A stretch of DNA of 62,879 nucleotides, filler included, from Octopus bimaculoides (Eukaryota), in assembly GCF_001194135.2 (NCBI RefSeq). It is 9 parts of 9 records of this genome, joined end to end, with 100 filler letters (N's around TTAATTAATTAA, not from the genome) between each part and the next. Parts side by side here need not be neighbours in the genome. Positions count along the whole stretch, not along the records: positions 32,952 to 40,613 come from NC_069008.1; 8 more parts are not named here. One strand, written 5' to 3'. The position numbers were made by a program, and so were the translations under genes. The notes below the pieces were generated by a model. That model was not told the origin of the DNA. It saw only the letters and a program-made list of their open reading frames with translations, and made no database searches. This document shows, in pieces, positions 31,435 through 42,540 of this stretch. Position 1 is the stretch's first letter. Each line of letters begins with the position of its first letter.

Positions 31435-33149
31435 CTGCAGAAGAAAAAAGGATATACATAAATATAAACATACACATAGATGCATATAAATATATATATA
31501 TATACACACACCACACACATATACATATATATATATATGTTTGTGTGAATATACACATATATAATACATATACACATATATAATACACACATATACATAT
31601 ATATATATATGTTTGTGTGAATATACACATATATAATACATATACACATATATNNNNNNNNNNNNNNNNNNNNNNNNNNNNNNNNNNNNNNNNNNNNNNN
31701 NNNNNNNNNNNNNNNNNNNNNNNNNNNNNNNNNNNNNNNNNNNNNNNNNNNNNNNNNNNNNNNNNNNNNNNNNNNNNNNNNNNNNNNNNNNNNNNNNNNN
31801 NNNNNNNNNNNNNNNNNNNNNNNNNNNNNNNNNNNNNNNNNNNNNNNNNNNNNNNNNNNNNNNNNNNNNNNNNNNNNNNNNNNNNNNNNNNNNNNNNNNN
31901 NNNNNNNNNNNNNNNNNNNNNNNNNNNNNNNNNNNNNNNNNNNNNNNNNNNNNNNNNNNNNNNNNNNNNNNNNNNNNNNNNNNNNNNNNNNNNNNNNNNN
32001 NNNNNNNNNNNNNNNNNNNNNNNNNNNNNNNNNNNNNNNNNNNNNNNNNNNNNNNNNNNNNNNNNNNNNNNNNNNNNNNNNNNNNNNNNNNNNNNNNNNN
32101 NNNNNNNNNNNNNNNNNNNNNNNNNNNNNNNNNNNNNNNNNNNNNNNNNNNNNNNNNNNNNNNNNNGGGTCGATCAATAGGGATCGTGTATCACAGTCAA
32201 TGTAAAAAAACGGGGAACAGATTAGGTTTATCCGTGGAGAGAAAAGCCTACGGAAAAGACCACGGTCACCTCAGGCTTTTTTTTTTTTTTAAAGGTACAT
32301 GAAAGTAAGTACCTTTTGTCTCTTTTTGTTACAAGTCTATGCTTAAAATCGTGTCGTCTTTCATTCTTACCATTCTTGCCACATTTACCCATTTTTTATT
32401 GAAACTTTCATTCGACAACAACATAGATAGGTTTCTTTATTAGCCACACAGGGCTCAACACAGAGGGGACAAAATACAAAGACAACAACATAGATAGATA
32501 GATAGATAGATAGATAGATGGATAGATATCTTACGGTATGACGGTTTGGCACCGGTATTTCCTGGATACACTGAAAAAAGAAAGAATACGTACATATAAA
32601 TATATATGCATACGTCTATATGAATGTGTATATAATTATGTGTGTGTGTGTGTGTATGTGTGCATCTGCAGACAGGTTTGTGTATATACATCAATGTAAA
32701 CATGCATGTAAAAAAACAACATAGATTTATAGACAGGCAGACAAACTGAGTGGTAGATAGATAAATGGATAGATACACTGAGAGATGGATAGTATACACA
32801 AAGATATATATATATATATATATATATATGAATATTATATATATATATATANNNNNNNNNNNNNNNNNNNNNNNNNNNNNNNNNNNNNNNNNNNNTTAAT
32901 TAATTAANNNNNNNNNNNNNNNNNNNNNNNNNNNNNNNNNNNNNNNNNNNNATATATACATAAACATGTACATATACTATATATAAATATATACACACAC
33001 AGAAAGACAGCATGTTGAATGTTACAACAGTAATTGTTAGTGTGTAGAATGCAATGTATGTGATACAGGTTCAATTTCTGAATGCACCCATTTACAATAA
33101 TAATAATAATAATAACAACAAGATTCAAATTTAATATTTCTGAAAATAT

Positions 33150-36100
33150 TTATTTGTCATAATGAAAGAAAGCAAAAGGTTGACATCCAAGAATAATTCC
33201 AAAAACCATCAAAGAATTTTCTGAAACATCAAAACCAAGAACTTCAGAGACTTCATTATCATAATTCTTGAGGAGTAAATATTCTGGATTATATTCCAAT
33301 GTCAGGATTTCAATATCTTCAGATGTTTCCTCTTCAATATATCCAAATATTTGATAAATATTGTTTTTTATATCTGTTATATAAACACATTCACCAATTG
33401 TAGTTAGATGAGGTCTTGCAGTATAAAATTCCATATCAAAATATATTCCTCCTATTCTTATCCTCCTCACCAATGACTTTTCCCTGAATCATTCCACAAG
33501 ATAGAAATCATTCCACTTTCCATACTCCTTCTTCTCATCCCTCCTCATCACCAAAAGATGTGACTCCCACATCATCCACCACCACATCTCCCGCCAACCT
33601 TCCCCATCTCCCCGTCTATCCACGACACACTTCATCTTTACATTCCCCATCTTTGATATCAACCACAACCACATAATAAGAGTCAAAGGTATTGTGGTTG
33701 ATGCAAATGTAGTAAACCTTGTTGAGCCATTCTCTTTTGTATTTCTTGTCTCTCTCTTCTTGAGTTATGTCTCTAATATAATAACCACCACACACAAGAT
33801 GATTGTCGTTCTATTTATAAATCCTGTTGTAGTATTTCTCAGTTCTGATGGTTTTTAAACAACAGAGATCCCTGTTGAAGACCCTCATTTCTCTACCAAA
33901 GGCGACAATGAAACGTTCATCTGTCCACCAACAAATGTCTAGTGGTGCTTCATCTTGTTGTTCATGTTGAAGTATGTCCACTGTTGTTGTTGTTGTTCTG
34001 ATTAATGTGAGACTTTCTCGAAACATCAACACACTCACATTCTCATCTAACTTAATTAGTTTACTGTTCCGGTCCCTAATGTCCATCAAATCATAATCAA
34101 CAGGTTCCTCGAATGCAGGAATGGAAAAAGGGACTATTGCTGTTCTATATGGAAGTCTCCTCACTGATATTTCATCAATTCCTGAATTATTAATCTCCGC
34201 TATGTAATTACCACATCTCACCTTTAATCTACCTATTAATTATTTCACCTGATTCACCTCTTCTTCCTCCATCTCCATCTCCTCCTCTGTATTCCAATTT
34301 ATTAATTAATTCATTACTGAATATTTCCTTGTTCGTCTCAGATGTAATGGAAGGGAAACAAAGACCAGAATCAAGATTTAATAACGACACAGATTCCAGA
34401 ACCTTCACTTGGTCCCCATCAATCTTTATGCAATGACATTCAATCAATTCAATATGTTGACACCAGTAAATACCCCCCACTTTTCTCCATATTACACCAT
34501 AAGACTTGTCCAAGCTTTAGATTTCTTCAAATCTTTTCCATTCAGTTGAAATATTTCTTTTCTTTTAGGAACCATGGCCATTATGTGTTTTCCTTGTGTA
34601 AAACACACACCACCAACTAAACTTGCCACATTTCTGTGACATAGCAACTCTCCGTCTTCATCAAATATTTTAACATTTCCATTATTGGCTTTTTCACACA
34701 CAACTGTCTTTCCTTCATCAGAAATATCAAAATCTTTTACTTGAACAGGAAATTCGTCTGTTTGTAAACGAGCAACCGGGAAGCTTTCTCGATTCACCAT
34801 AAACAACCCTTCAACATACAATTCATTCTGTCCCCACCAGGGGCTTCCAACAAACCTTGGTCCTTTACAGTTTATACTGGAGAAATATATTTCATCTTTA
34901 TAAATTCTTTTATTTAAAAATATTCTGTTGTATTCCCCATTTTGGGTCAAACACAAGATGTTTTTATATCCAGATGAACCTAATTATTCCTCCCACTGAC
35001 CCTGAATGTACAAAAAACTGTCATCAATTGTCATCTTGTCATCATTAAAATAATACCACATGTAGTGTCTGACTGAATGTAAATATTGACCATCACTGTT
35101 GAAGAAAATGATGAATCTTTCATTGAAGACAATGATGACATCATCAGCAGTAACTTTAATATTCTTGATGACATCATCATAATTCCCATCTTCGAATCTC
35201 ATTAATAATGTTTCAGGTATGCCTATTTGTTTTATTTCATTCACACTTGGATGGATTTCATCAATATCAACAAAATACAATATAATTATTAAGTTGATTA
35301 TTTGTAACGAGATCATTAACCAACAAATTATGATCGTTTATAGCAAACATACGGCTCTTGTCTGCCAGATAAACAAGCATTTTATCAATATATCCACCGC
35401 AGAGATTGTGGGGACGTTTCACTTGGTACATTAAAACACTGGGGACCATCTGACGACTGCCATGACCACCACTAATGTGCTTGATGAAAGCTTCCGTTTG
35501 GGACTCTGAAACCCTGGGCATCATCTCAATACTACTACTATCATCACTACTACTAATACTACCATCACTTGCCACTACTCTGACGATGTCCACCACTATG
35601 ACCACCACCATCTATTCTAGTATTGTGCTGCAAAGCTTTTCCCCTAGTAACAATTAATAGCTTTTGCGTTTCTTTTTCTATTAATGATTTCACAAAAAAA
35701 AAGGGATATTAATTCTATGAATTCTTTCAACTTGATTATAATATTTGATGGCTAAAATATCTAAATGTGATGGTTTATCACAATAACAAACAATTTCACC
35801 TTCACCCATCTTACACACCCGTACATAAGGCTGCCCTAATGATACACTTCTCACTGTCTTTGATAGGTTTCCGATGACCCTTAATTGTTTCTGTAGGGGT
35901 ANNNNNNNNNNNNNNNNNNNNNNNNNNNNNNNNNNNNNNNNNNNNNNNNNNNNNNNNNNNNNNNNNNNNNNNNNNNNNNNNNNNNNNNNNNNNNNNNNNN
36001 NNNNNNNNNNNNNNNNATGTATAACAAGCAATCATGGTTGATGTCGGACACCACCAACTGTCGATTTGCCAGATTACATATTTCGCCAATGACAAGTTTT

Positions 36101-36180
36101 TTGTCATTCTCCTTTTCTTTGAGTCGTAGATTTAGATTTCTGATATAAGGATTTTTCAGGTGTAAACAACAGCCAGACGA
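33150..36180 (-). pseudogene. Decayed continuation of the beta-propeller gene (several more NHL-like propeller repeats)
   Basis: The frame continues past the TAG at 36181 (SSGCCLHLKN...QLVVSDINHDCLLYI). Later segments stay propeller-like (VKDFDISDEGKTVVCEKANNGNVKIFDEDG; PLDICWWTDERFIVAFG). In-frame stops at 34984, 33811, 33616 and 33489 and about 6 frame switches. AATAAA overlaps the last stop at ~33150. Confidence 0.7.
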
Positions 36181-38232
36181 CTAGTCCTGATACTTGTAAA
36201 GAAGGACCCTGTTGAGTTGAGTGTCCGGTAGATAAACAGTCCCTTGGAAAACAGCAATGTGAGGGTGAACAGGGAAAGGCAGTTGCCACTGCCATTTCAT
36301 TTCTCCATATATATCATAACATATCAGAATAGAGTGTCTCTTGAAGAGGACATAAAAATAAACATTATCAGAGTAGATGTGATGGGGAGAGCCATAGGAT
36401 GGAAGGTATTTTTGAAAAAGTTCTTCACCACATGTGGAATAAAATACCATTTTATTTTCGCTTCTATCTACGACTACAAAATTAATTGGAGTTGCAGTAA
36501 TGGTGACATTATAATGTCCCAGAGAAATTCTTTCAATAATATCAACTTTATCTTCGTTGATCAGTAGGATATGGATCTCAGTTTTGTTTTCAGTGGTGGT
36601 CACAGCTAAACACTTATTTAATACAATATGACATATTTCCATGTAATCAGTTTGGACCTTTATTAAAGGACCTTTTCCAAGTTCAGGACAGGTGATATAC
36701 TGAAATCCTTTCATTTCACGATAAAATACCAGGAATCTGTTTGCATTTATTCTACAACAGAAAGAAGGAAGCTCAAGGAAAACTAAATTATTTTGGTTAA
36801 TTATTTCCCCAGTATCAGTGAATAATTTAGCTTTCTTGTTCTTGTAAATTATTAATATAGAAGATGTAGACATAGGTAGAATATTTGTAACGTTATAGCA
36901 ATCGTTAATATAAATATAGTCTTTCAAACTGGGGGTATGTAGCTGATGGTTGTATGACAGTTTGGGCCAAAAGTATTTATTTGTTTCAATGGCATGTGGT
37001 TTGCCAAAATAATCTGTTACCAAAATGGTATCTTTAACAACAGAAATAGAACGGCATTTCCTGCCAATGTCCCTCTTTGTCACACCACCTTTAGCCGAAA
37101 TCCTATAAATGATCTGTCCCTGGAGGACATAGAAATAGCTTTGGTAGAGAGAGATTTTACTTGGGAGGTGCAGAGAATGGGTCTCTACCTCCCATAACTG
37201 TTGGCCATCCACTTTATAACAGATTACTCTGTTAATACTGGAAAATGTAATTAAAAGTATATTCTGGACACCTACAGCAATATCTGTAGGTATTTCTTTG
37301 GTAATGAATTCATTTCGAATTCTGTTATTTTCCCACTCAATTTGGTAAATAGTCTTTCCAAACATTTCTACACCTATGAGTGTAGAATGTTCAAAGTAAG
37401 TCACCATATATAATCCCATCTGTATTCTTTTAATCTTGAAGCTTGTGGGACTAATTAATACAATCATTTTTTGGAAGGGGAGGGTTGCTAGAACCATGTC
37501 TTGACTGATTCTGGTGAAACTGGTAACTGAAGATGGACAATGAACATCATTTCTGTTACCGTCTCTTGTTACACAACATATTGTCATACAATGGCTGGAA
37601 TATGTCACTATTCCATCATGTATGATAATACTGGATATTATTGTGCTTTTCTCAAATTCTTCTCCAGATTCCTTAATCTTTGCTTCTCTGGTCACAACTG
37701 GCCAAAGAGGTCGAAATTTAGTGATTATTTTTGGTGGCTCAATGGTTTTGTGTTTGTCTTGTAGAATATTTCTCTGTAAATAGTGTCCCAGGAACAATTC
37801 TAGTTTTCCAAAAATAATAAATTCTTGATCGTAATCGATTTTTTTAATGTTTTTCATCAAAATTTCTATTTTCTGTGTAAAATCTTTTAGAAAAGTATTT
37901 TTATCCATTCCTATACATTTTAAAAAAATACATATTTCTTCTCGAGAATTTTTCAACAAATTAATTTTGTCTTCATATGCATTAAATCTTGTGTAAAATA
38001 TATGTTTGCCCAAAATATTTCGTTTTCCCACTATTTCCCTCTTTTCACGGTCTCCTTTATGTCTTTTTTGTTTTGTTGTTGACTGAGATGAAGCTCCTTT
38101 CTCTGACATTTCTCTCCTTGAACCCACATCTCTCTCATATTTACACCTTTTATTGTCAACTCCTTCATCCCTTTTCCTTTTTGAGTAACTGACAGCCCTT
38201 TTCTGAGGGGTAGGTTTTGCTTGGTCTTCCAT
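36181..38232 (-). CDS. 683-aa protein: Lys/Arg-rich N-terminus, helical/coiled-coil-like segment and about two NHL/TolB-like six-bladed beta-propellers (TRIM-NHL-like C-terminal architecture, no RING/B-box seen)
   Basis: Uninterrupted 2052-nt ORF in AT-rich DNA. Blade-like repeats (PTDIAVGVQNILLITFSSINRVICYKVDGQQLW; GSPHHIYSDNVYFYVL; HPHIAVFQGTVYLPDTQLNRVLLY). Splice acceptor 7 nt upstream of the ATG. Domain call is by motif recognition only. Confidence 0.78.
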   Translation of the reverse strand: MEDQAKPTPQKRAVSYSKRKRDEGVDNKRCKYERDVGSRREMSEKGASSQSTTKQKRHKGDREKREIVGKRNILGKHIFYTRFNAYEDKINLLKNSREEICIFLKCIGMDKNTFLKDFTQKIEILMKNIKKIDYDQEFIIFGKLELFLGHYLQRNILQDKHKTIEPPKIITKFRPLWPVVTREAKIKESGEEFEKSTIISSIIIHDGIVTYSSHCMTICCVTRDGNRNDVHCPSSVTSFTRISQDMVLATLPFQKMIVLISPTSFKIKRIQMGLYMVTYFEHSTLIGVEMFGKTIYQIEWENNRIRNEFITKEIPTDIAVGVQNILLITFSSINRVICYKVDGQQLWEVETHSLHLPSKISLYQSYFYVLQGQIIYRISAKGGVTKRDIGRKCRSISVVKDTILVTDYFGKPHAIETNKYFWPKLSYNHQLHTPSLKDYIYINDCYNVTNILPMSTSSILIIYKNKKAKLFTDTGEIINQNNLVFLELPSFCCRINANRFLVFYREMKGFQYITCPELGKGPLIKVQTDYMEICHIVLNKCLAVTTTENKTEIHILLINEDKVDIIERISLGHYNVTITATPINFVVVDRSENKMVFYSTCGEELFQKYLPSYGSPHHIYSDNVYFYVLFKRHSILICYDIYGEMKWQWQLPFPVHPHIAVFQGTVYLPDTQLNRVLLYKYQD

Positions 38233-38239
38233 AGTGAAT

Positions 38240-38270
38240 CTGTAATGAAATATAAGGAAAACATTTAGCT
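38240..38270 (-). promoter_or_regulatory. 3' splice acceptor (polypyrimidine tract + AG) opening the giant propeller exon at 38239
   Basis: Minus strand reads gctaaatgttttccttatatttcattacag|ATTCACTATGGAAGAC. Confidence 0.65.
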
Positions 38271-40351
38271 TTGTGAAAATATTAAGGTTTCAGGGAGATG
38301 ATGTTTACTTCATTATTTGAAACACACAAACAAAACATTTCTGTATTTCTGTCAGTGCATAAATGTTGTCTAATTAATATTTAAACAACATTTTGTTTGA
38401 ATAAAAATTATAAGAAATAAACAACTTATTACAATCTATTTTGAGATGTATTAATAAGTTTCATTAATTATACGAATTCAAATATTAGCAATAATTATAT
38501 TCACTGGAAATGATTTTGCTTTCAACATCACAAAGTAATAATCACGTGTGGTTTAGATTTATTTAACGATAATTAGTCAAAGAGATTCCCCTGCTCCAAA
38601 AGTATTCAATAATGAGACACTCCACTCTCTAGAGAAAATTAACTTTAATTGGTATACATGCTATATTATGTCCCAACATACAGCAATCATATTTAAACTT
38701 CGTTAACATGGAACGATTAGCAAAACATAGACTTCATGTTTCATAGACATTTGTCAGACACAAGACAGACTGAACATTTTGTTAGTTAGATGGAATGTAA
38801 GTATTACTAATGATTATATGTCCTGGAAATGATGGGACCGTCATGGTTGGCTTGGTTTCCATCATATTTACCTGGATTAAGAGATATCAATAAAGCTGGN
38901 NNNNNNNNNTTGGCTTGGTTTCCATCATATTTACCTGGATTAAGAGATATCAATAAAGCTGGAGATGAAACTGGTTCTTAACCTGACAAATGCTGTAAAT
39001 CTCTCAACATTTCAATATAACCCACACAATTATCATAGACAACATTGATTAAACTTGGAAAGCTTATCAAAAGATGGGCTTTCATATAATCACACTGATA
39101 CACAGCATGTTGAGAGGATCATTATTATTTGTTCCTGATTGAGATAATAAAGATTGGTTAATGAATAAGCTTAATTAACGAAAGGTAGGTTCATCTAAAT
39201 TATCTTTAATATAAGGGGCAATGTTTGAGTAGCAATGAGAAAGATGTGTTTGTATGAAAAAGGGGTTTGGCATGTGAAGTGTGTTAGGAGATATAACTTG
39301 GTGTAGTTTATTATGAAGTATTGGGGGTTTAATGAGGTGGATTAGGAAATATTGGTGGGGGTGATTAATGACATTCTGGTGACTCATCATCATCAGAATG
39401 ATCCTCCACCCCCTCCTTGGTCTATAAAATAATGACTGTTACTTTATTGACCCCAGGAGGAATGGAGAGTAAAAGTGACCTTCTTCAGGATGTCAGCTCT
39501 TTGAATATACATGGACTAAACAAGAACATATTTTTGAAAAAACCGGGTAGGGCTATGTTGTTGTTATTGGTGTTGTTGTTGACAACAAAGTTTATAAAGA
39601 GAAAACCAGATAATTGCAAATATTTCAACTGTAAAATTAAATTGGAATTAATGTTTATTTCACTAGTGCCATTCTATTTGTTTTATTTTGTGGGAAGAAA
39701 AACCTAGAAAAACTATCATAATAATTGTATTAGACTTTAATCTAATTGTATATGTATTCATATGCACATGCATACATATATATGAAAGAATGAATGTGTA
39801 TAATATATATACAAACAAACATGCACATATGTATATTTATACAACCATATGTATGTATGTATGATCATCATTTTACCCCCACTTTCCATGCTGGTATGGG
39901 TTGTATGGTTCGAAGAATATCATCATTGGAGATAATTGCCATGTCCTTGACAAAACTAAAGGTTCCCCTCAATCTCTGGGTTTAACATATACCCTGGGAT
40001 GGGTGAGAGATCTAGGGTAATAGATATATGAAAAGTAGTGGTTGAGTGTTGGGGAGAGACTCAGGTAGGTCCAGTGACATCCCTAGTTTCATTGGAAGAA
40101 TGGTGAAGAGAAGAGATTTACTGCCAATCTTTGTCAGAGCAATAAGAAGAGAGAGTGATTGAGAGATGAAAGATCGAGGTAGGGGTGATAGGGGCATGGC
40201 AGTAGGGACACAGGTCACAGTGACATGGGTGATATAAAGGATGTGTGATATTGGAAGTGAATAATAGGTTATGTATGCTAGAGGGGTGTGATAAATACGA
40301 GAGAGTAGCAAGAAAGTTGAAAGTGTAGACTTTATATACATATATATATAC

Positions 40352-40590
40352 TCTTTTACTCTTTTACTCTTTTACTCTTTTACTTGTTTCAGTCTTTTGA
40401 CTGTGGCCATGCTGGAGCACCGCCTTTAGTCGAGCAAATCGACCCCAGGACTTATTCTTTGGAAGCCTAGTACTTATTCTTTCGGTCTCTTTTGCCGAAC
40501 CGCTAAGTTACGGGGACGTAAACACACCAGCATCGGTTGTCAAGCGATGTTGGGGGGACAAACACAGACATACAAACACATACACACATA
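40352..40590 (-). mobile_element. 3' part of SINE family B with (GAGTAAAA)n tail
   Basis: Reverse complement of the family B tail; ctcttttact is repeated at 40351-40384. Confidence 0.85.
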
Positions 40591-42540
40591 CATATATATA
40601 TATACATATATACNNNNNNNNNNNNNNNNNNNNNNNNNNNNNNNNNNNNNNNNNNNNTTAATTAATTAANNNNNNNNNNNNNNNNNNNNNNNNNNNNNNN
40701 NNNNNNNNNNNNNATATATATATATATATATATACATACATACATATGGCTCAATAATATTGACACAGGAGTGTTGAGTAAATCAAACTATATGTGTATG
40801 TATATATATAAAGTTACCTCTGGAAACTTATTCTTTGACTTTGAGTTATATAATTGATAATAGAAAAATATAGATGGACGTGATTCCACCAATCTTGTTA
40901 CCTTACTCGTAGCAAAATAATCATTAACTAGTTGGGATCACCAGTGAATAGATAATAACGCGTTACATGCAACTCGAAGTAATTATAACTGTTCTCCTCA
41001 CCGAAATATTTCTTGCATCTAGCTCTTGTCCTAGAACTTGATAATAACACTAATTTCTAACACACCCAAATGCTTCAGATGAAAAACAATAATGTTTATT
41101 CCATTCTAGTTGCGCTGTATGTCACTTGTATTTCCATTCGTAACAATACATACCTCATTTTACAAAATTTCCTGAAACACGACACTGCAGTCTCAGTTTA
41201 TAATTTTAATCAACATGAATCTTCTCCTTCATAGATATTATCGTTTACAAAAATGTAAAGAAAGACATTGTTTTTAGGTTAACATATCAACCAGAGAATA
41301 TAAAAGATTCCAGATATAACAGATTTTTGAATGATTTCTTCAACGGCGATATGAATTTTCCCTTTATATTCTTCTACGTGTGATTCTGTATTTAACGAAC
41401 GATCTCCATCTGCATTCGATAAAACCTTTAACAATAATACAACACATATATATGCATAATTATTCCTTCCTAGTTTGACAGTATTTAATATTGCTGAACG
41501 TTTTTACGTGTGTGTGAAGTCCTCATATTTCTATTTTTCATGTATACTTCAGAGAATTGTGTAAGATTCGATTATTTTCACCTAATGCATTTCACAGAAT
41601 CATGAAAAAGATAGAGAGCAAAGGAAAATAACTGTGTTTTGTTGGTAATATTATTTTGTACCTTATGCAGGCTTTAAAGTGAATTTCGAGCAAACAAGTA
41701 TTAAAAAAATAAATAATACAATTTCCCATAATTTGCCAGTAAAGCGTTGTTGAGAGCGCTTTTTTATGTAAATGAAAAAAGGAATAAGCTGAAATGAAAA
41801 TAAATCTTTGGATATATTGCATAACATGTTATTGCACTATAAACAATTAGCTAAATTCAAGAAAAAAAGACAATGAACATGATGACGATTTTGATGTGCG
41901 GATTGGTTTTGGGTTGATCATTTATTTAAAAACATATTTAAATGGATATTAAGCAAAAGTGTAGGGAATAATGCTCAGAGGCGTAATGTGAATTCCTATA
42001 GGAAGATTACACTTGAATCAAATTTTCTGTGGAGTATAATATTTAATGATAAATCTTATACTGCATAATCACCAAATGCATGATACAAGTATTATTCTTT
42101 TTTAAATGAGTATATTTTTTAACTGGATATTCCAGTTTAAAACCGATAATGAATTACATTAATGATGAACATATTAATGAATATAACGGAAACGGAATTA
42201 GAGATCTATGTTGGAGAATTTCTCTACAAGCAGTAGTTAGCTTAATTAAGCAAAACAATACGAGCATTTACATGTTTGTCTAGGACATAGGAATGTGACA
42301 GCTTTATTATACAATAAAATTGGTAAGTATCACATGATGTAATTATTGAAAATGCATTCAAATGGAGAAAAAATTTCAGACGATTTCAAAATAATCGTAA
42401 ACATATTGTAGATGTGAGATAAACAATCTCCTTAAGTTGATATGATTTAATATTCCGAAGCATTAAATGTGGCAAATGTGACATGTAACATTTTCCTACT
42501 TCAAGGAGAGGAAATTATGCTACTAATATTTCAGTTACAT

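What the first reader, a model, noticed from the sequence alone, without database searches (positions are those of the whole stretch)
33150..38239. A 5-kb multi-propeller exon: 5' 2 kb pristine, 3' 3 kb decaying
Seen: one apparent exon could encode roughly 1,700 aa of tandem NHL-like propellers. The first 683 codons have no lesion, while the next ~3 kb carry at least 4 further in-frame stops and about 6 frameshifts yet remain propeller-like, and the frame runs straight through the first stop. The N-terminus has NLS-like basic clusters (KRKR, KRHK). Known: molluscs have expanded, fast-evolving TRIM/NHL-like propeller families often linked to immunity. Inference: a gene caught shortening, with the two-propeller product under selection and the old coding tail becoming 3' UTR; possibly a lineage-specific receptor or adaptor family that varies propeller number.
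Basis: partly seen in the sequence, partly recalled or inferred. Interest (0 to 1): 0.7.

Follow-up and report, generated by a model that had tools for sequence, protein, structure and literature searches.

The report
Truncated octopus six-propeller gene copy
This is the Octopus bimaculoides copy of a giant gene found only in octopods: it normally encodes six propeller domains, but here a stop codon cuts it after two and the last 3 kb has decayed, and whether the intact front part still makes a useful short protein is likely but unproven.

Summary
On the minus strand, 38232-36181 is an unbroken 683-codon ORF. Family homology then runs in frame through the TAG at 36183-36181 and on to the family's normal stop at 33152-33150. 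That tail carries 4 more in-frame stops, 6 frameshifting indels (one a 470-bp deletion) and the N gap.

The piece is Octopus bimaculoides chromosome CM046628.1. It shares flanks with an intact 1,811-codon ORF in O. sinensis and a nearly intact O. vulgaris copy. The family is known only from octopods (Octopus, Argonauta) and is unnamed. Members have a basic N-terminus, a novel helical domain and six ~265-aa units. A structure model shows the first two units as six-bladed propellers. Units 3-6 resemble NHL domains of RING/B-box/NHL proteins.

The stop lies in the linker after propeller 2. The head has no lesion where about 7 are expected from the tail's rate (P~8e-4). Its dN/dS on the O. bimaculoides branch is 0.23, against 1.1 for the tail. 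So "a gene caught shortening" is plausible (~50%).

Three caveats remain. The head has too many synonymous changes, and its closest relative changes along its length; both suggest gene conversion. There is no expression data. The tails of intact copies also evolve at dN/dS of about 1 or more.

The parts
38240..38337 (-). 98-nt block just upstream of the coding exon, conserved among paralogs. It ends in a pyrimidine tract and a putative splice acceptor AG (38241-38240), 7 nt before the ATG.
   Evidence: Homology between paralogs starts here (L002 and L003 position 9903). The sequence ...tttcattacag|attcactATG was read. The splice site is inferred, not shown.
36181..38232 (-). Intact 683-codon ORF, the 'head', including the premature stop TAG at 36183-36181.
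   Evidence: It is 81% identical to O. vulgaris P0002. No stop or frameshift against any comparator.
37993..38232 (-). Residues 1-80: basic, probably disordered N-terminus with KRKR and KRHK clusters that look like nuclear localisation signals.
   Evidence: Translation; pLDDT 23-28. No NLS predictor was run. No hydrophobic signal-peptide-like start, by inspection.
37765..37989 (-). Residues 82-156: family-specific domain of three helices, with no known relative.
   Evidence: Helices 82-107, 111-131 and 137-156. A profile of 15 members finds nothing credible in the PDB or Pfam.
36973..37644 (-). Residues about 197-420: propeller 1, six blades.
   Evidence: 23 beta strands between residues 200 and 416, pLDDT 74-88. 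Foldseek top hits are tandem beta-propeller proteins. Internal repeat offset is about 255-265 aa.
36184..36924 (-). Residues about 437-683: propeller 2, six blades. Its last strand (675-680) ends just before the stop.
   Evidence: 23 strands between residues 439 and 680.
36181..36183 (-). Premature stop TAG. The aligned codon is CGG in the O. sinensis and O. vulgaris orthologs and in paralog L002, and Gln in O. bimaculoides paralog P0013.
36019..36180 (-). 54 codons that continue the old frame with no lesion: the linker and the start of former propeller 3.
   Evidence: 89-93% amino-acid identity to family members.
35902..36016 (.). Assembly gap of 115 N. Homologs predict 92 nt missing. Continuity and frame cannot be decided.
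33150..35899 (-). Decayed tail: remnants of propellers 3-6, ending at the family's normal stop TAA 33152-33150.
   Evidence: tblastn frames run -2, -1, -2, -3, -2, -3, -1. Lesion list. dN/dS is 1.0-1.1 on the O. bimaculoides branch.
35694..35702 (-). T9 homopolymer carrying a +2 frameshift.
35530..35600 (-). Ser/Gly-rich region of variable length that contains a frameshift: -8 against L002, or +136 against L003.
35277..35281 (-). Junction of a 455-470 bp deletion (length mod 3 = 2) that removes about 155 aa of former propeller 4.
34984..34986 (-). In-frame stop TAA (Tyr in the reference).
34498..34510 (-). -7 frameshift (approximate position).
34230..34238 (-). -2 frameshift (approximate position).
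33811..33813 (-). In-frame stop TAG (Tyr in the reference).
33616..33618 (-). In-frame stop TAG (Glu in the reference).
33540..33550 (-). -14 frameshift (approximate position).
33489..33491 (-). In-frame stop TGA (Trp in the reference).
33149..33154 (-). AATAAA hexamer overlapping the ancestral stop codon, still intact and followed by an (ATT)n run. Probably the family's poly(A) signal.
   Evidence: Function is inferred.

Best explanation
What it is (shown, about 95% sure). This is the Octopus bimaculoides ortholog of a gene from an unnamed family known only from octopods. The coding part is one giant exon.

Intact members have about 1,650-1,925 aa; the syntenic O. sinensis ortholog has 1,811 codons. 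They are built from a basic N-terminus, a ~75-aa helical domain with no known relative, and six tandem ~265-aa units. The first two units are modelled as six-bladed beta-propellers, and units 3-6 are NHL-like.

In O. bimaculoides, the codon that is CGG in the comparators has become TAG. It lies in the linker right after propeller 2. The 3 kb downstream then picked up at least 10 more disabling lesions and evolves neutrally.

How it probably works now (inferred, about 50%). The head is still a gene. The whole coding sequence lies in the terminal exon, so by established knowledge a premature stop there should not trigger exon-junction-dependent mRNA decay. The mRNA can then yield a 683-aa protein made of the N-terminal module plus two propellers, with the dead tail serving as a long 3' UTR up to the old AATAAA. 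Selection keeps this head open.

Family role (speculative). The protein has no signal-peptide-like start and has NLS-like basic clusters, so it is probably an intracellular, possibly nuclear, multivalent binding protein. Its conserved head would be the common module and its fast-evolving C-terminal propellers the variable, target-recognising part. A head-only product would then be a recognition-less variant or a regulator.
For: Identity and orthology. The source is GCA_001194135.2, CM046628.1. About 2 kb of upstream flank and the flank beyond the stop are collinear with L003 (O. vulgaris) and L004 (O. sinensis), but not with paralog L002. L004 carries an open 1,811-codon frame.

Family. Only 43 representatives were found among 1.84 billion proteins. 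Every clear family member whose source was looked up is from Octopus or Argonauta. Many members are full-length, at 1,650-1,925 aa.

Architecture. Self-HHalign gives repeat offsets of about 255 and 530 aa, at 97-98.6% probability. The AlphaFold2 model has two 23-strand beta domains with pLDDT of about 75-88. Foldseek matches tandem-propeller proteins at E=1e-17. Units 3-6 match NHL domains of RING/B-box/NHL proteins at 90-97% probability.

Lesions. There are none in the 2,049-nt head, against 4 stops and 6 frameshifts in the 2,913 sequenced nt of tail. From the tail's rates, 7.0-7.2 lesions are expected in the head, so P(none) is about 8e-4.

Selection. Among changes unique to O. bimaculoides (four outgroups agree), the head has 17 synonymous and 15 non-synonymous changes (omega 0.23). 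The tail has 10 and 44 (omega 1.1) plus 2 stops. By codon position the head counts are 18/11/30 (chi-square p=0.009) and the tail counts 39/24/33.

Timing. The tail's 4 stops are about what neutrality over the whole branch predicts (my estimate of roughly 2.5-4, from the rates). So the head appears to have stayed constrained while the tail was already dead.

A second case. O. sinensis L005 keeps a 711-codon head in front of a tail with a 2.46-kb deletion, insertions and frameshifts.
Against: No transcript, protein or population data could be consulted.

Synonymous excess. The head's overall substitution rate on the O. bimaculoides branch equals the tail's (2.3% against 2.2%). Its synonymous rate is about 3 times the tail's neutral rate: 17 changes seen against about 6 expected. 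CpG sites do not explain this. Simple purifying selection does not predict it.

Signs of gene conversion. 27 of 65 'bimaculoides-specific' head changes are shared with paralogs L005 or L006. The nearest protein relative switches along the sequence and is often another O. bimaculoides paralog. Conversion from intact paralogs could keep the head clean without any selection on a short product.

Selection bias. This copy was picked out because of its asymmetry, in a family with dozens of copies. Homologs were found with the head as query, which favours copies with intact heads. The reverse pattern also exists: L002 has a broken head and an intact 1,105-codon tail.

Assembly. All frameshifts lie beyond an assembly gap, in a 7.7-kb contig group of a gap-rich assembly. 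I believe the assembly is short-read based, but that is my own knowledge and not a tool result.
Confidence: 0.5

Rival explanations
1. The head is kept clean by gene conversion. The whole locus is a pseudogene. Its head is the part most similar among paralogs, so it is repeatedly overwritten by non-allelic gene conversion from intact neighbours. That erases lesions and imports differences that are mostly synonymous. No short protein is under selection.
For: - The head's synonymous rate on the O. bimaculoides branch is about 3 times the tail's neutral rate, while total rates are equal.
- 42% of apparent lineage-specific head changes are shared with other paralogs.
- The nearest neighbour changes from segment to segment, and O. 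bimaculoides paralogs are often the closest.
- Changes unique to this copy look clustered, at codons 201-260 and 518-612.
- N-terminal domain types are swapped between orthologs.
Against: - The head and its 2-kb upstream flank stay collinear with the orthologous loci at ortholog-level identity.
- The tail also shows affinity to same-species paralogs in places, yet its lesions were not erased.
- Conversion would have to stop short of, or predate, the stop at 36183.
- Head synonymous divergence exceeds tail synonymous divergence in every pair compared, including O. sinensis against O. vulgaris. It may therefore be a regional property of the gene and not a sign of conversion here.
Confidence: 0.2
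2. An ordinary dying pseudogene. The whole copy is non-functional. Either the head is still open by luck, or it lost constraint only recently, well after the tail.
For: - The family shows birth-and-death turnover, with many truncated or frameshifted copies: L002, L003, L006 and gene models of 366-1,177 aa.
- The copy was selected after the fact for its asymmetry.
- With strict polarisation (five outgroups) the changes unique to this copy fall 11/6/12 by codon position, which does not differ from uniform.
Against: - P(no lesion in the head) is about 8e-4 at the tail's lesion rate.
- Omega is 0.23 in the head against 1.1 in the tail on the same branch. A Fisher test I worked out by hand on 17/15 against 10/44 gives p of about 0.001; it was not run with a tool.
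- The tail's stop count fits neutrality over the whole branch.
- L005 repeats the pattern with an even older tail.
Confidence: 0.2
3. An assembly artefact. The tail lesions, or the join between head and tail across the N gap, are errors from assembling a recently duplicated family. The real gene would then be full-length.
For: - The piece is a 7.7-kb contig group bounded by N gaps of 3.8 kb and 2.8 kb, with a 115-N gap exactly between the clean and damaged parts.
- One frameshift sits in a T9 run and another in a Ser/Gly repeat.
Against: - Ten lesions of different kinds are not typical assembly errors: four base-substitution stops, indels of -2, -7, -8 and -14 in ordinary sequence, and a 470-bp deletion.
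- Both sides of the gap carry flanks that match the same orthologous locus, at equal divergence.
- The stop at 36183 is on the head's own contig.
Confidence: 0.06
4. A longer product is rescued by splicing or readthrough. Introns or stop-codon readthrough would remove the lesions, so that more than two propellers are still made.
For: Automated gene models of relatives do skip damaged stretches with introns, for example P0018 and P0021.
Against: - Intact relatives encode the whole protein in one uninterrupted frame.
- At least 10 lesions spread over 3 kb would need many new introns.
- The longest open tail fragments are only 110-154 codons.
Confidence: 0.03

Closest known systems
Unnamed octopod family of giant multi-propeller proteins (for example O. 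bimaculoides XP_014776406.1 / LOC106873529; O. vulgaris CAI9743080.1; Argonauta hians GAB1597371.1). All are annotated only as 'uncharacterized' or 'hypothetical'.
   Same: The head is 43-89% identical to family members. The tail is homologous right to the family's C-terminal ...FFHYDK motif. It has the same single coding exon, upstream acceptor block and AATAAA at the stop.
   Different: It is truncated at codon 684 of about 1,800, and the tail is disabled. Intact members keep all six propellers.
TRIM-NHL / RING-B-box-NHL proteins (the class that includes Brat, LIN-41/TRIM71 and TRIM2/3; these names come from my own knowledge).
   Same: Units 3-6 of the family match the NHL beta-propeller of RING/B-box/NHL proteins (profile search E 6e-7 to 9e-4; HHalign 90-97% probability). 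The two units modelled, U1 and U2, each have six blades.
   Different: There is no RING, B-box or TRIM-type coiled coil, and the N-terminal domain is unrelated. There are six propellers in tandem instead of one. Pfam's NHL model does not reach significance on any member. The two propellers kept here are the least NHL-like, at 65-69% probability at most.
Tandem beta-propeller scaffolds (WD40 pairs of IFT-A subunits, UTP21 and similar SSU-processome proteins, and sperm doublet-microtubule proteins).
   Same: These are the best structural matches to the modelled 683-aa product: two adjacent propellers.
   Different: Sequence identity is only 7-11% and global TM-scores are 0.22-0.30. The likeness is in fold class, not in family.
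Fast-evolving multigene families with a conserved core and a variable recognition domain, under birth-and-death evolution. TRIM5-like restriction factors and NLR-type receptors are analogies from my own knowledge.
   Same: Lineage-restricted expansion concentrated on one chromosome, many pseudogenised or truncated copies, mosaic relationships between copies, a head at omega of about 0.3, and C-terminal domains at omega of about 1 or more even between intact orthologs.
   Different: No functional, expression or ligand data exist, so an immune or recognition role is only an analogy.

Membership tests
Octopod giant multi-propeller family (unnamed) | Significant sequence homology of the N-terminal module and propellers 1-2 | tested here: met
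   E=0, 43-89% identity to more than 50 Octopus proteins.
Octopod giant multi-propeller family (unnamed) | Homology continues through propellers 3-6 to the C-terminal FFHYDK motif and the stop/AATAAA | tested here: met
   at the DNA and conceptual-translation level.
Octopod giant multi-propeller family (unnamed) | One uninterrupted reading frame of about 1,650-1,925 codons | tested here: not met
   The frame is open for 683 codons only. After that there are 5 stops and 6 frameshifts. So this is a truncated or partly pseudogenised member.
NHL-repeat six-bladed beta-propeller (Pfam PF01436, NHL) | Match to the Pfam NHL repeat model | tested here: not met
   No NHL hit at E<=1 for the window ORF, the tail ORFs or four long relatives.
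NHL-repeat six-bladed beta-propeller (Pfam PF01436, NHL) | Profile-level similarity to bona fide NHL domains | tested here: inconclusive
   Units 3-6 reach 90-97% HHalign probability against NHL domains of RING/B-box/NHL proteins. Units 1-2, the ones kept here, reach only 65-69%. Units 1-2 are nevertheless homologous to the later units.
NHL-repeat six-bladed beta-propeller (Pfam PF01436, NHL) | Six four-stranded blades per domain | tested here: met
   The AlphaFold2 model has 23 strands in residues 200-416 and 23 in residues 439-680. This is a prediction, at pLDDT of about 75-88.
TRIM-NHL proteins | N-terminal RING, B-box and coiled-coil (the tripartite motif) | tested here: not met
   No zinc-finger or B-box hit in Pfam. 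The N-terminal profile shows no similarity to the TRIM-like hits or to anything in the PDB or Pfam.
Pseudogene (non-processed, unitary or duplicated) | Disabling lesions relative to functional relatives | tested here: met
   Met for 36183-33150. Not met for the 683-codon head.
Pseudogene (non-processed, unitary or duplicated) | Neutral substitution pattern (dN/dS of about 1) | tested here: inconclusive
   Tail omega is 1.0-1.1 and head omega 0.23-0.26 on the O. bimaculoides branch. However, tails of intact copies are also at about 1 or more, and the head shows an unexplained excess of synonymous changes.
Functional truncated gene | Transcription and translation of the short ORF | not testable with these tools
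   No RNA-seq, cDNA or proteome resource was available. The only contig on record that encodes the exact protein is the genome record itself.
Transposable element or retrocopy | Sharp unit ends with terminal repeats or a poly(A) tail, or a transposase/RT-like ORF | tested here: not met
   Homology between paralogs runs from -98 nt to about +60 nt. The 5' end is an intron-like acceptor block, there is no poly(A) tract at the 3' end, and the protein is all propellers with no enzyme domain. Terminal repeats were not searched for formally.

The most novel reading that the evidence does not exclude
Octopods carry a previously undescribed family of intracellular proteins with six NHL-like propellers. 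The C-terminal propellers would be under diversifying selection, as a recognition system, for example against viral or transposon RNA or for self/non-self discrimination. The family would repeatedly spin off selected 'head-only' two-propeller genes, of which this locus and O. sinensis L005 are two. These could act as regulators or decoys of the full-length proteins.
Probability: 0.2. Interest if true: 0.65.

Novelty: new variant of a known kind. Interest (0 to 1): 0.42.

Why it matters
If the head really is maintained, this locus shows a large modular gene being shortened at a domain boundary. Its intact ortholog (O. sinensis), a near-intact ortholog (O. vulgaris) and a second, older truncation (L005) are available for comparison. 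That makes it a clean natural experiment on how multi-domain proteins lose modules and how old coding sequence becomes 3' UTR.

More broadly, it points to a family that is unnamed in the databases and for which four literature searches found no description. The family is known only from octopods, has dozens of copies of a ~1,800-aa six-propeller protein concentrated on one small chromosome, and shows rapid change in its C-terminal propellers. That profile is usual for recognition or conflict genes, and cephalopods have few characterised examples.

If the head is only kept clean by gene conversion or by luck, the locus is an ordinary partial pseudogene in a family with rapid gain and loss of copies.

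Tried and rejected
- **Sequence searches on the ORF.** Pfam, and PDB sequence searches, on the ORF, the tail ORFs and long relatives gave no meaningful hits.
- **Single-sequence AlphaFold2.** Unusable, with pLDDT 34. It was repeated with a 47-sequence alignment.
- **N-terminal helical domain.** A profile search against the PDB and Pfam gave only noise: V-ATPase subunit G at E=0.011, plus scattered single hits.
- **Transposon or retrocopy idea.** I considered it because paralogs share a sharply bounded 5.6-kb unit and satellites flank some copies. I rejected it: the 5' boundary is an acceptor-like intron end, there is no poly(A) tail, there is no enzyme domain, and orthologous flanks are conserved.
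- **Chimeric-scaffold idea.** Made unlikely by orthologous flanks on both sides of the gap.
- **CpG hypermutability.** Rejected as the cause of the head's synonymous excess.
- **Window-unique amino acids, head against tail.** Uninformative, because intact copies show the same head/tail ratio.
- **Truncation hot-spot after propeller 2.** Four of about 20 truncated gene models end at reference positions 645-740, but these are automated models and ends are scattered along the gene. I make no claim from this.
- **Literature.** Four full-text searches found no paper on this family.
- **Locus of P0004.** Not on record.
- **First dN/dS pass.** It was distorted by the non-homologous N-terminal type in O. 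sinensis. I redid it for codons 171-638.

Full report
**Source and context**

The piece (window 32952-40613) is Octopus bimaculoides assembly GCA_001194135.2, chromosome record CM046628.1. It is a 7.66-kb group of contigs bounded by N gaps of 3.8 kb and 2.8 kb. It has internal gaps at 35902-36016 (115 N) and 38900-38909 (10 N). The feature lies on the minus strand.

An ATG-to-TAG ORF of 683 codons occupies 38232..36181. tblastn with relatives shows that homology continues in the same frame through TAG 36183-36181 to the gap edge at 36019. After the gap it continues in frames -2, -1, -2, -3, -2, -3 and -1, down to 33153. The last codons read ...FAFFHYDK followed by TAA (33152-33150), which is the normal family C-terminus.

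A three-way DNA alignment with two O. vulgaris copies gives the lesion list:
- stops at 36183, 34986, 33813, 33618 and 33491;
- frameshifts of +2 (T9 run, 35702-35694), -8 (about 35570, in a Ser/Gly repeat), -470/-455 (junction at 35281/35279, about 155 aa lost), -7 (about 34504), -2 (about 34235) and -14 (about 33546);
- a +2/+4 pair at 33999/33994 that restores the frame.

The KRKR and KRHK clusters are present.

**The gap, tested first**

With the nominal 115 N the frame differs on the two sides. Both O. vulgaris copies have 23 fewer bases at this point, so 92 hidden bases (32 codons between the flanking codons) would keep the frame continuous. Continuity cannot be decided from the sequence, and I do not count the gap as a lesion.

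Do the two sides belong to one locus? About 2 kb upstream of the ATG, and the sequence beyond the ancestral stop, are each collinear with the same O. vulgaris locus (L003) and O. sinensis locus (L004). A paralog (L002) shares only the unit from -98 nt to about +60 nt. Divergence from L004 is alike on both sides, at 88.8% and 87.7-87.8% identity. A chimeric join is therefore unlikely. It still matters that every frameshift lies beyond the gap.

**What the gene is**

The head matches only Octopus proteins, all annotated 'uncharacterized' or 'hypothetical'. An exhaustive profile search of 1.84 billion representative proteins found 43 hits. Every clear family member whose source was looked up is from Octopus or Argonauta hians. 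The weak hits are RING/B-box/NHL proteins.

Many members are full-length, at 1,650-1,925 aa. The syntenic O. sinensis locus has one open frame of 1,811 codons from its ATG. The O. vulgaris ortholog has 1,177 codons, one 5-nt insertion, about 620 more codons and a 1-nt deletion. The ancestral state was therefore a single-exon coding sequence of about 1,800 codons.

A pyrimidine tract and a CAG lie 7 nt before the ATG, inside a 98-nt block conserved among paralogs. Some O. vulgaris gene models add a small upstream exon. Both suggest a 5' non-coding exon followed by one giant coding exon.

**Architecture**

- Profile self-comparison of 20 full-length members gives repeats offset by about 255 and about 530 aa, at 97-98.6% probability. 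This implies roughly 190 N-terminal residues plus six units of about 265 aa.
- AlphaFold2 with a 47-sequence alignment models the 683-aa product as follows. Residues 1-80 are disordered. Helices span 82-156. Two beta domains of 23 strands each (200-416 and 439-680, pLDDT about 75-88) correspond to six four-stranded blades apiece.
- Foldseek's best PDB matches are tandem-propeller proteins, at E about 1e-17.
- Pfam's NHL model hits no member. Units 3-6 nevertheless match the NHL domains of RING/B-box/NHL proteins at 90-97% HHalign probability, and units 1-2 at 65-69% at most. 'NHL-like' is thus supported for the family, and only by transitivity for the two propellers kept here.
- The N-terminal helical domain has no detectable relative. 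It comes in two very divergent but alignable types.
- The stop falls just after the last strand of propeller 2. By analogy with the unit 1/unit 2 boundary, this is the inter-propeller linker.

**Is the head maintained?**

For:
- *Lesions.* There are none in 2,049 nt, against 10 in 2,913 sequenced nt of tail. Either from the raw lesion density, or from the tail's substitution rate times the 3.9% of substitutions that create stops plus the tail's frameshift rate, 7.0-7.2 lesions are expected in the head. P(none) is then about 8e-4.
- *Codon pattern on the O. bimaculoides branch.* With three outgroups the head is at omega 0.26 (changes by codon position 18/11/30, p=0.009) and the tail at 1.02. 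With four outgroups the head has Sd 17 and Nd 15 (omega 0.23), and the tail Sd 10 and Nd 44 (omega 1.11) plus two stops.
- *Timing.* The tail's four stops are about what neutral evolution over the whole branch predicts (my estimate, roughly 2.5-4).
- *A second case.* L005 in O. sinensis shares about 0.6 kb of upstream and 0.2 kb of downstream flank with this locus lineage and is about 14% diverged. It keeps a 711-codon head in front of a tail with a 2.46-kb deletion, three insertions and frameshifts.
- *Mechanism (established knowledge).* A premature stop in the terminal exon should escape exon-junction-dependent mRNA decay, so a truncated protein is a reasonable outcome.

Against:
- *Equal total rates.* The head's total rate on that branch equals the tail's (2.3% and 2.2%). 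The head's synonymous rate is therefore about 3 times the tail's neutral rate, and CpG sites do not explain it.
- *Mosaic relationships.* 27 of 65 'lineage-specific' head changes recur in paralogs L005 or L006. The nearest protein neighbour changes from segment to segment and is often an O. bimaculoides paralog. With five outgroups the changes unique to this copy fall 11/6/12 by codon position, which is not distinguishable from uniform. These are signs of gene conversion, which could keep the head clean without selection on a short product.
- *A family-wide contrast.* Head omega is about 0.3 and tail omega about 0.7-1.8 in all pairs. This includes O. sinensis (intact) against O. vulgaris, which differ at 60/60/34 sites by codon position in the tail. 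Only the lesions show that this particular tail is dead.
- *Ascertainment.* The locus was chosen for its asymmetry, in a family with dozens of copies. The reverse pattern exists in L002, which has a broken head and a 1,105-codon intact tail.
- *No expression data* could be consulted.

**Verdict**

It is near certain that this is a truncated, partly pseudogenised member of an uncharacterised octopod family of six-propeller, NHL-like proteins. I put about 20% each on gene conversion and on plain pseudogene decay, and under 10% on artefact or splicing rescue.

The family's function is unknown. It has no signal-peptide-like start and has NLS-like clusters. Its head is conserved and its C-terminal propellers change quickly. 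Its copies cluster on one small chromosome and are gained and lost often. Together these fit an intracellular recognition or conflict role, but that is inference by analogy.

No paper on the family was found.

Noticed in passing
L005 8001-12314 (O. sinensis VCDQ01005275.1): A second truncated copy. It has an intact 711-codon head whose stop lies 28 codons beyond the window's. Then come a 2.46-kb deletion, three insertions and frameshifts. It shares short flanks with the window's locus lineage.
   Followed up: partly
L002 10001-15428 (O. vulgaris OX597841.1): The reverse pattern in a paralog. The head carries a 19-nt insertion and a stop at about codon 703, while the following 1,105 codons up to FFHYDK are fully open.
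   Followed up: partly
Whole gene: window 38232-33150, and L002-L004: Synonymous divergence of the head is 1.5-3 times that of the tail in every pair. Tails of intact copies have dN/dS of about 1 or more: O. sinensis and O. vulgaris differ at 60/60/34 sites by codon position. The GC skew of the coding strand flips from about -0.1 in the head to between +0.15 and +0.48 in the tail. I have no explanation for this.
   Followed up: partly
window 40365-40613 (edge of the piece): A ~119-bp unit that forms arrays of about 25 copies next to paralogous loci in O. vulgaris (L002 15492-18440 and, inverted, 7706-8273) and also occurs near the O. sinensis loci. It is a satellite associated with this gene cluster.
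   Followed up: no
window 38968-39045: This stretch matches the 26-aa first exon of O. vulgaris gene models P0017 and P0043, at 85% identity, but has an in-frame stop here. It is probably a 5' non-coding exon about 0.75 kb upstream of the acceptor at 38241-38240.
   Followed up: no
window 37765-38232; L004 9512-9853: The N-terminal module exists in two very divergent but alignable types: 'MEDQ...KRHKG...YYTRFNAYEDKIN' and 'MEKINEENK...'. The O. sinensis ortholog carries the second type, while the O. bimaculoides and O. vulgaris orthologs carry the first. This implies module exchange between paralogs.
   Followed up: partly
window 33100-33154: AATAAA overlaps the ancestral stop codon and is followed by an (ATT)n microsatellite. 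Homology between paralogs ends about 60 nt after the stop, so intact family genes have a very short 3' UTR.
   Followed up: no
Family-wide: Most members sit on one small chromosome per species: O. vulgaris OX597841.1 (29 Mb), O. sinensis CM016888.1 (15 Mb) and O. bimaculoides CM046628.1 (18.6 Mb). C2H2 zinc-finger genes lie nearby (L002 20416-22206). A few conserved 1:1:1 members lie on other chromosomes, and Argonauta hians has members of 1,913-1,925 aa.
   Followed up: no
window 35520-35600; relatives P0007, P0008, P0013: A Ser/Gly/Asp-rich low-complexity linker between former propellers 3 and 4 varies by up to about 140 nt among copies. It is one of the frameshift sites.
   Followed up: no
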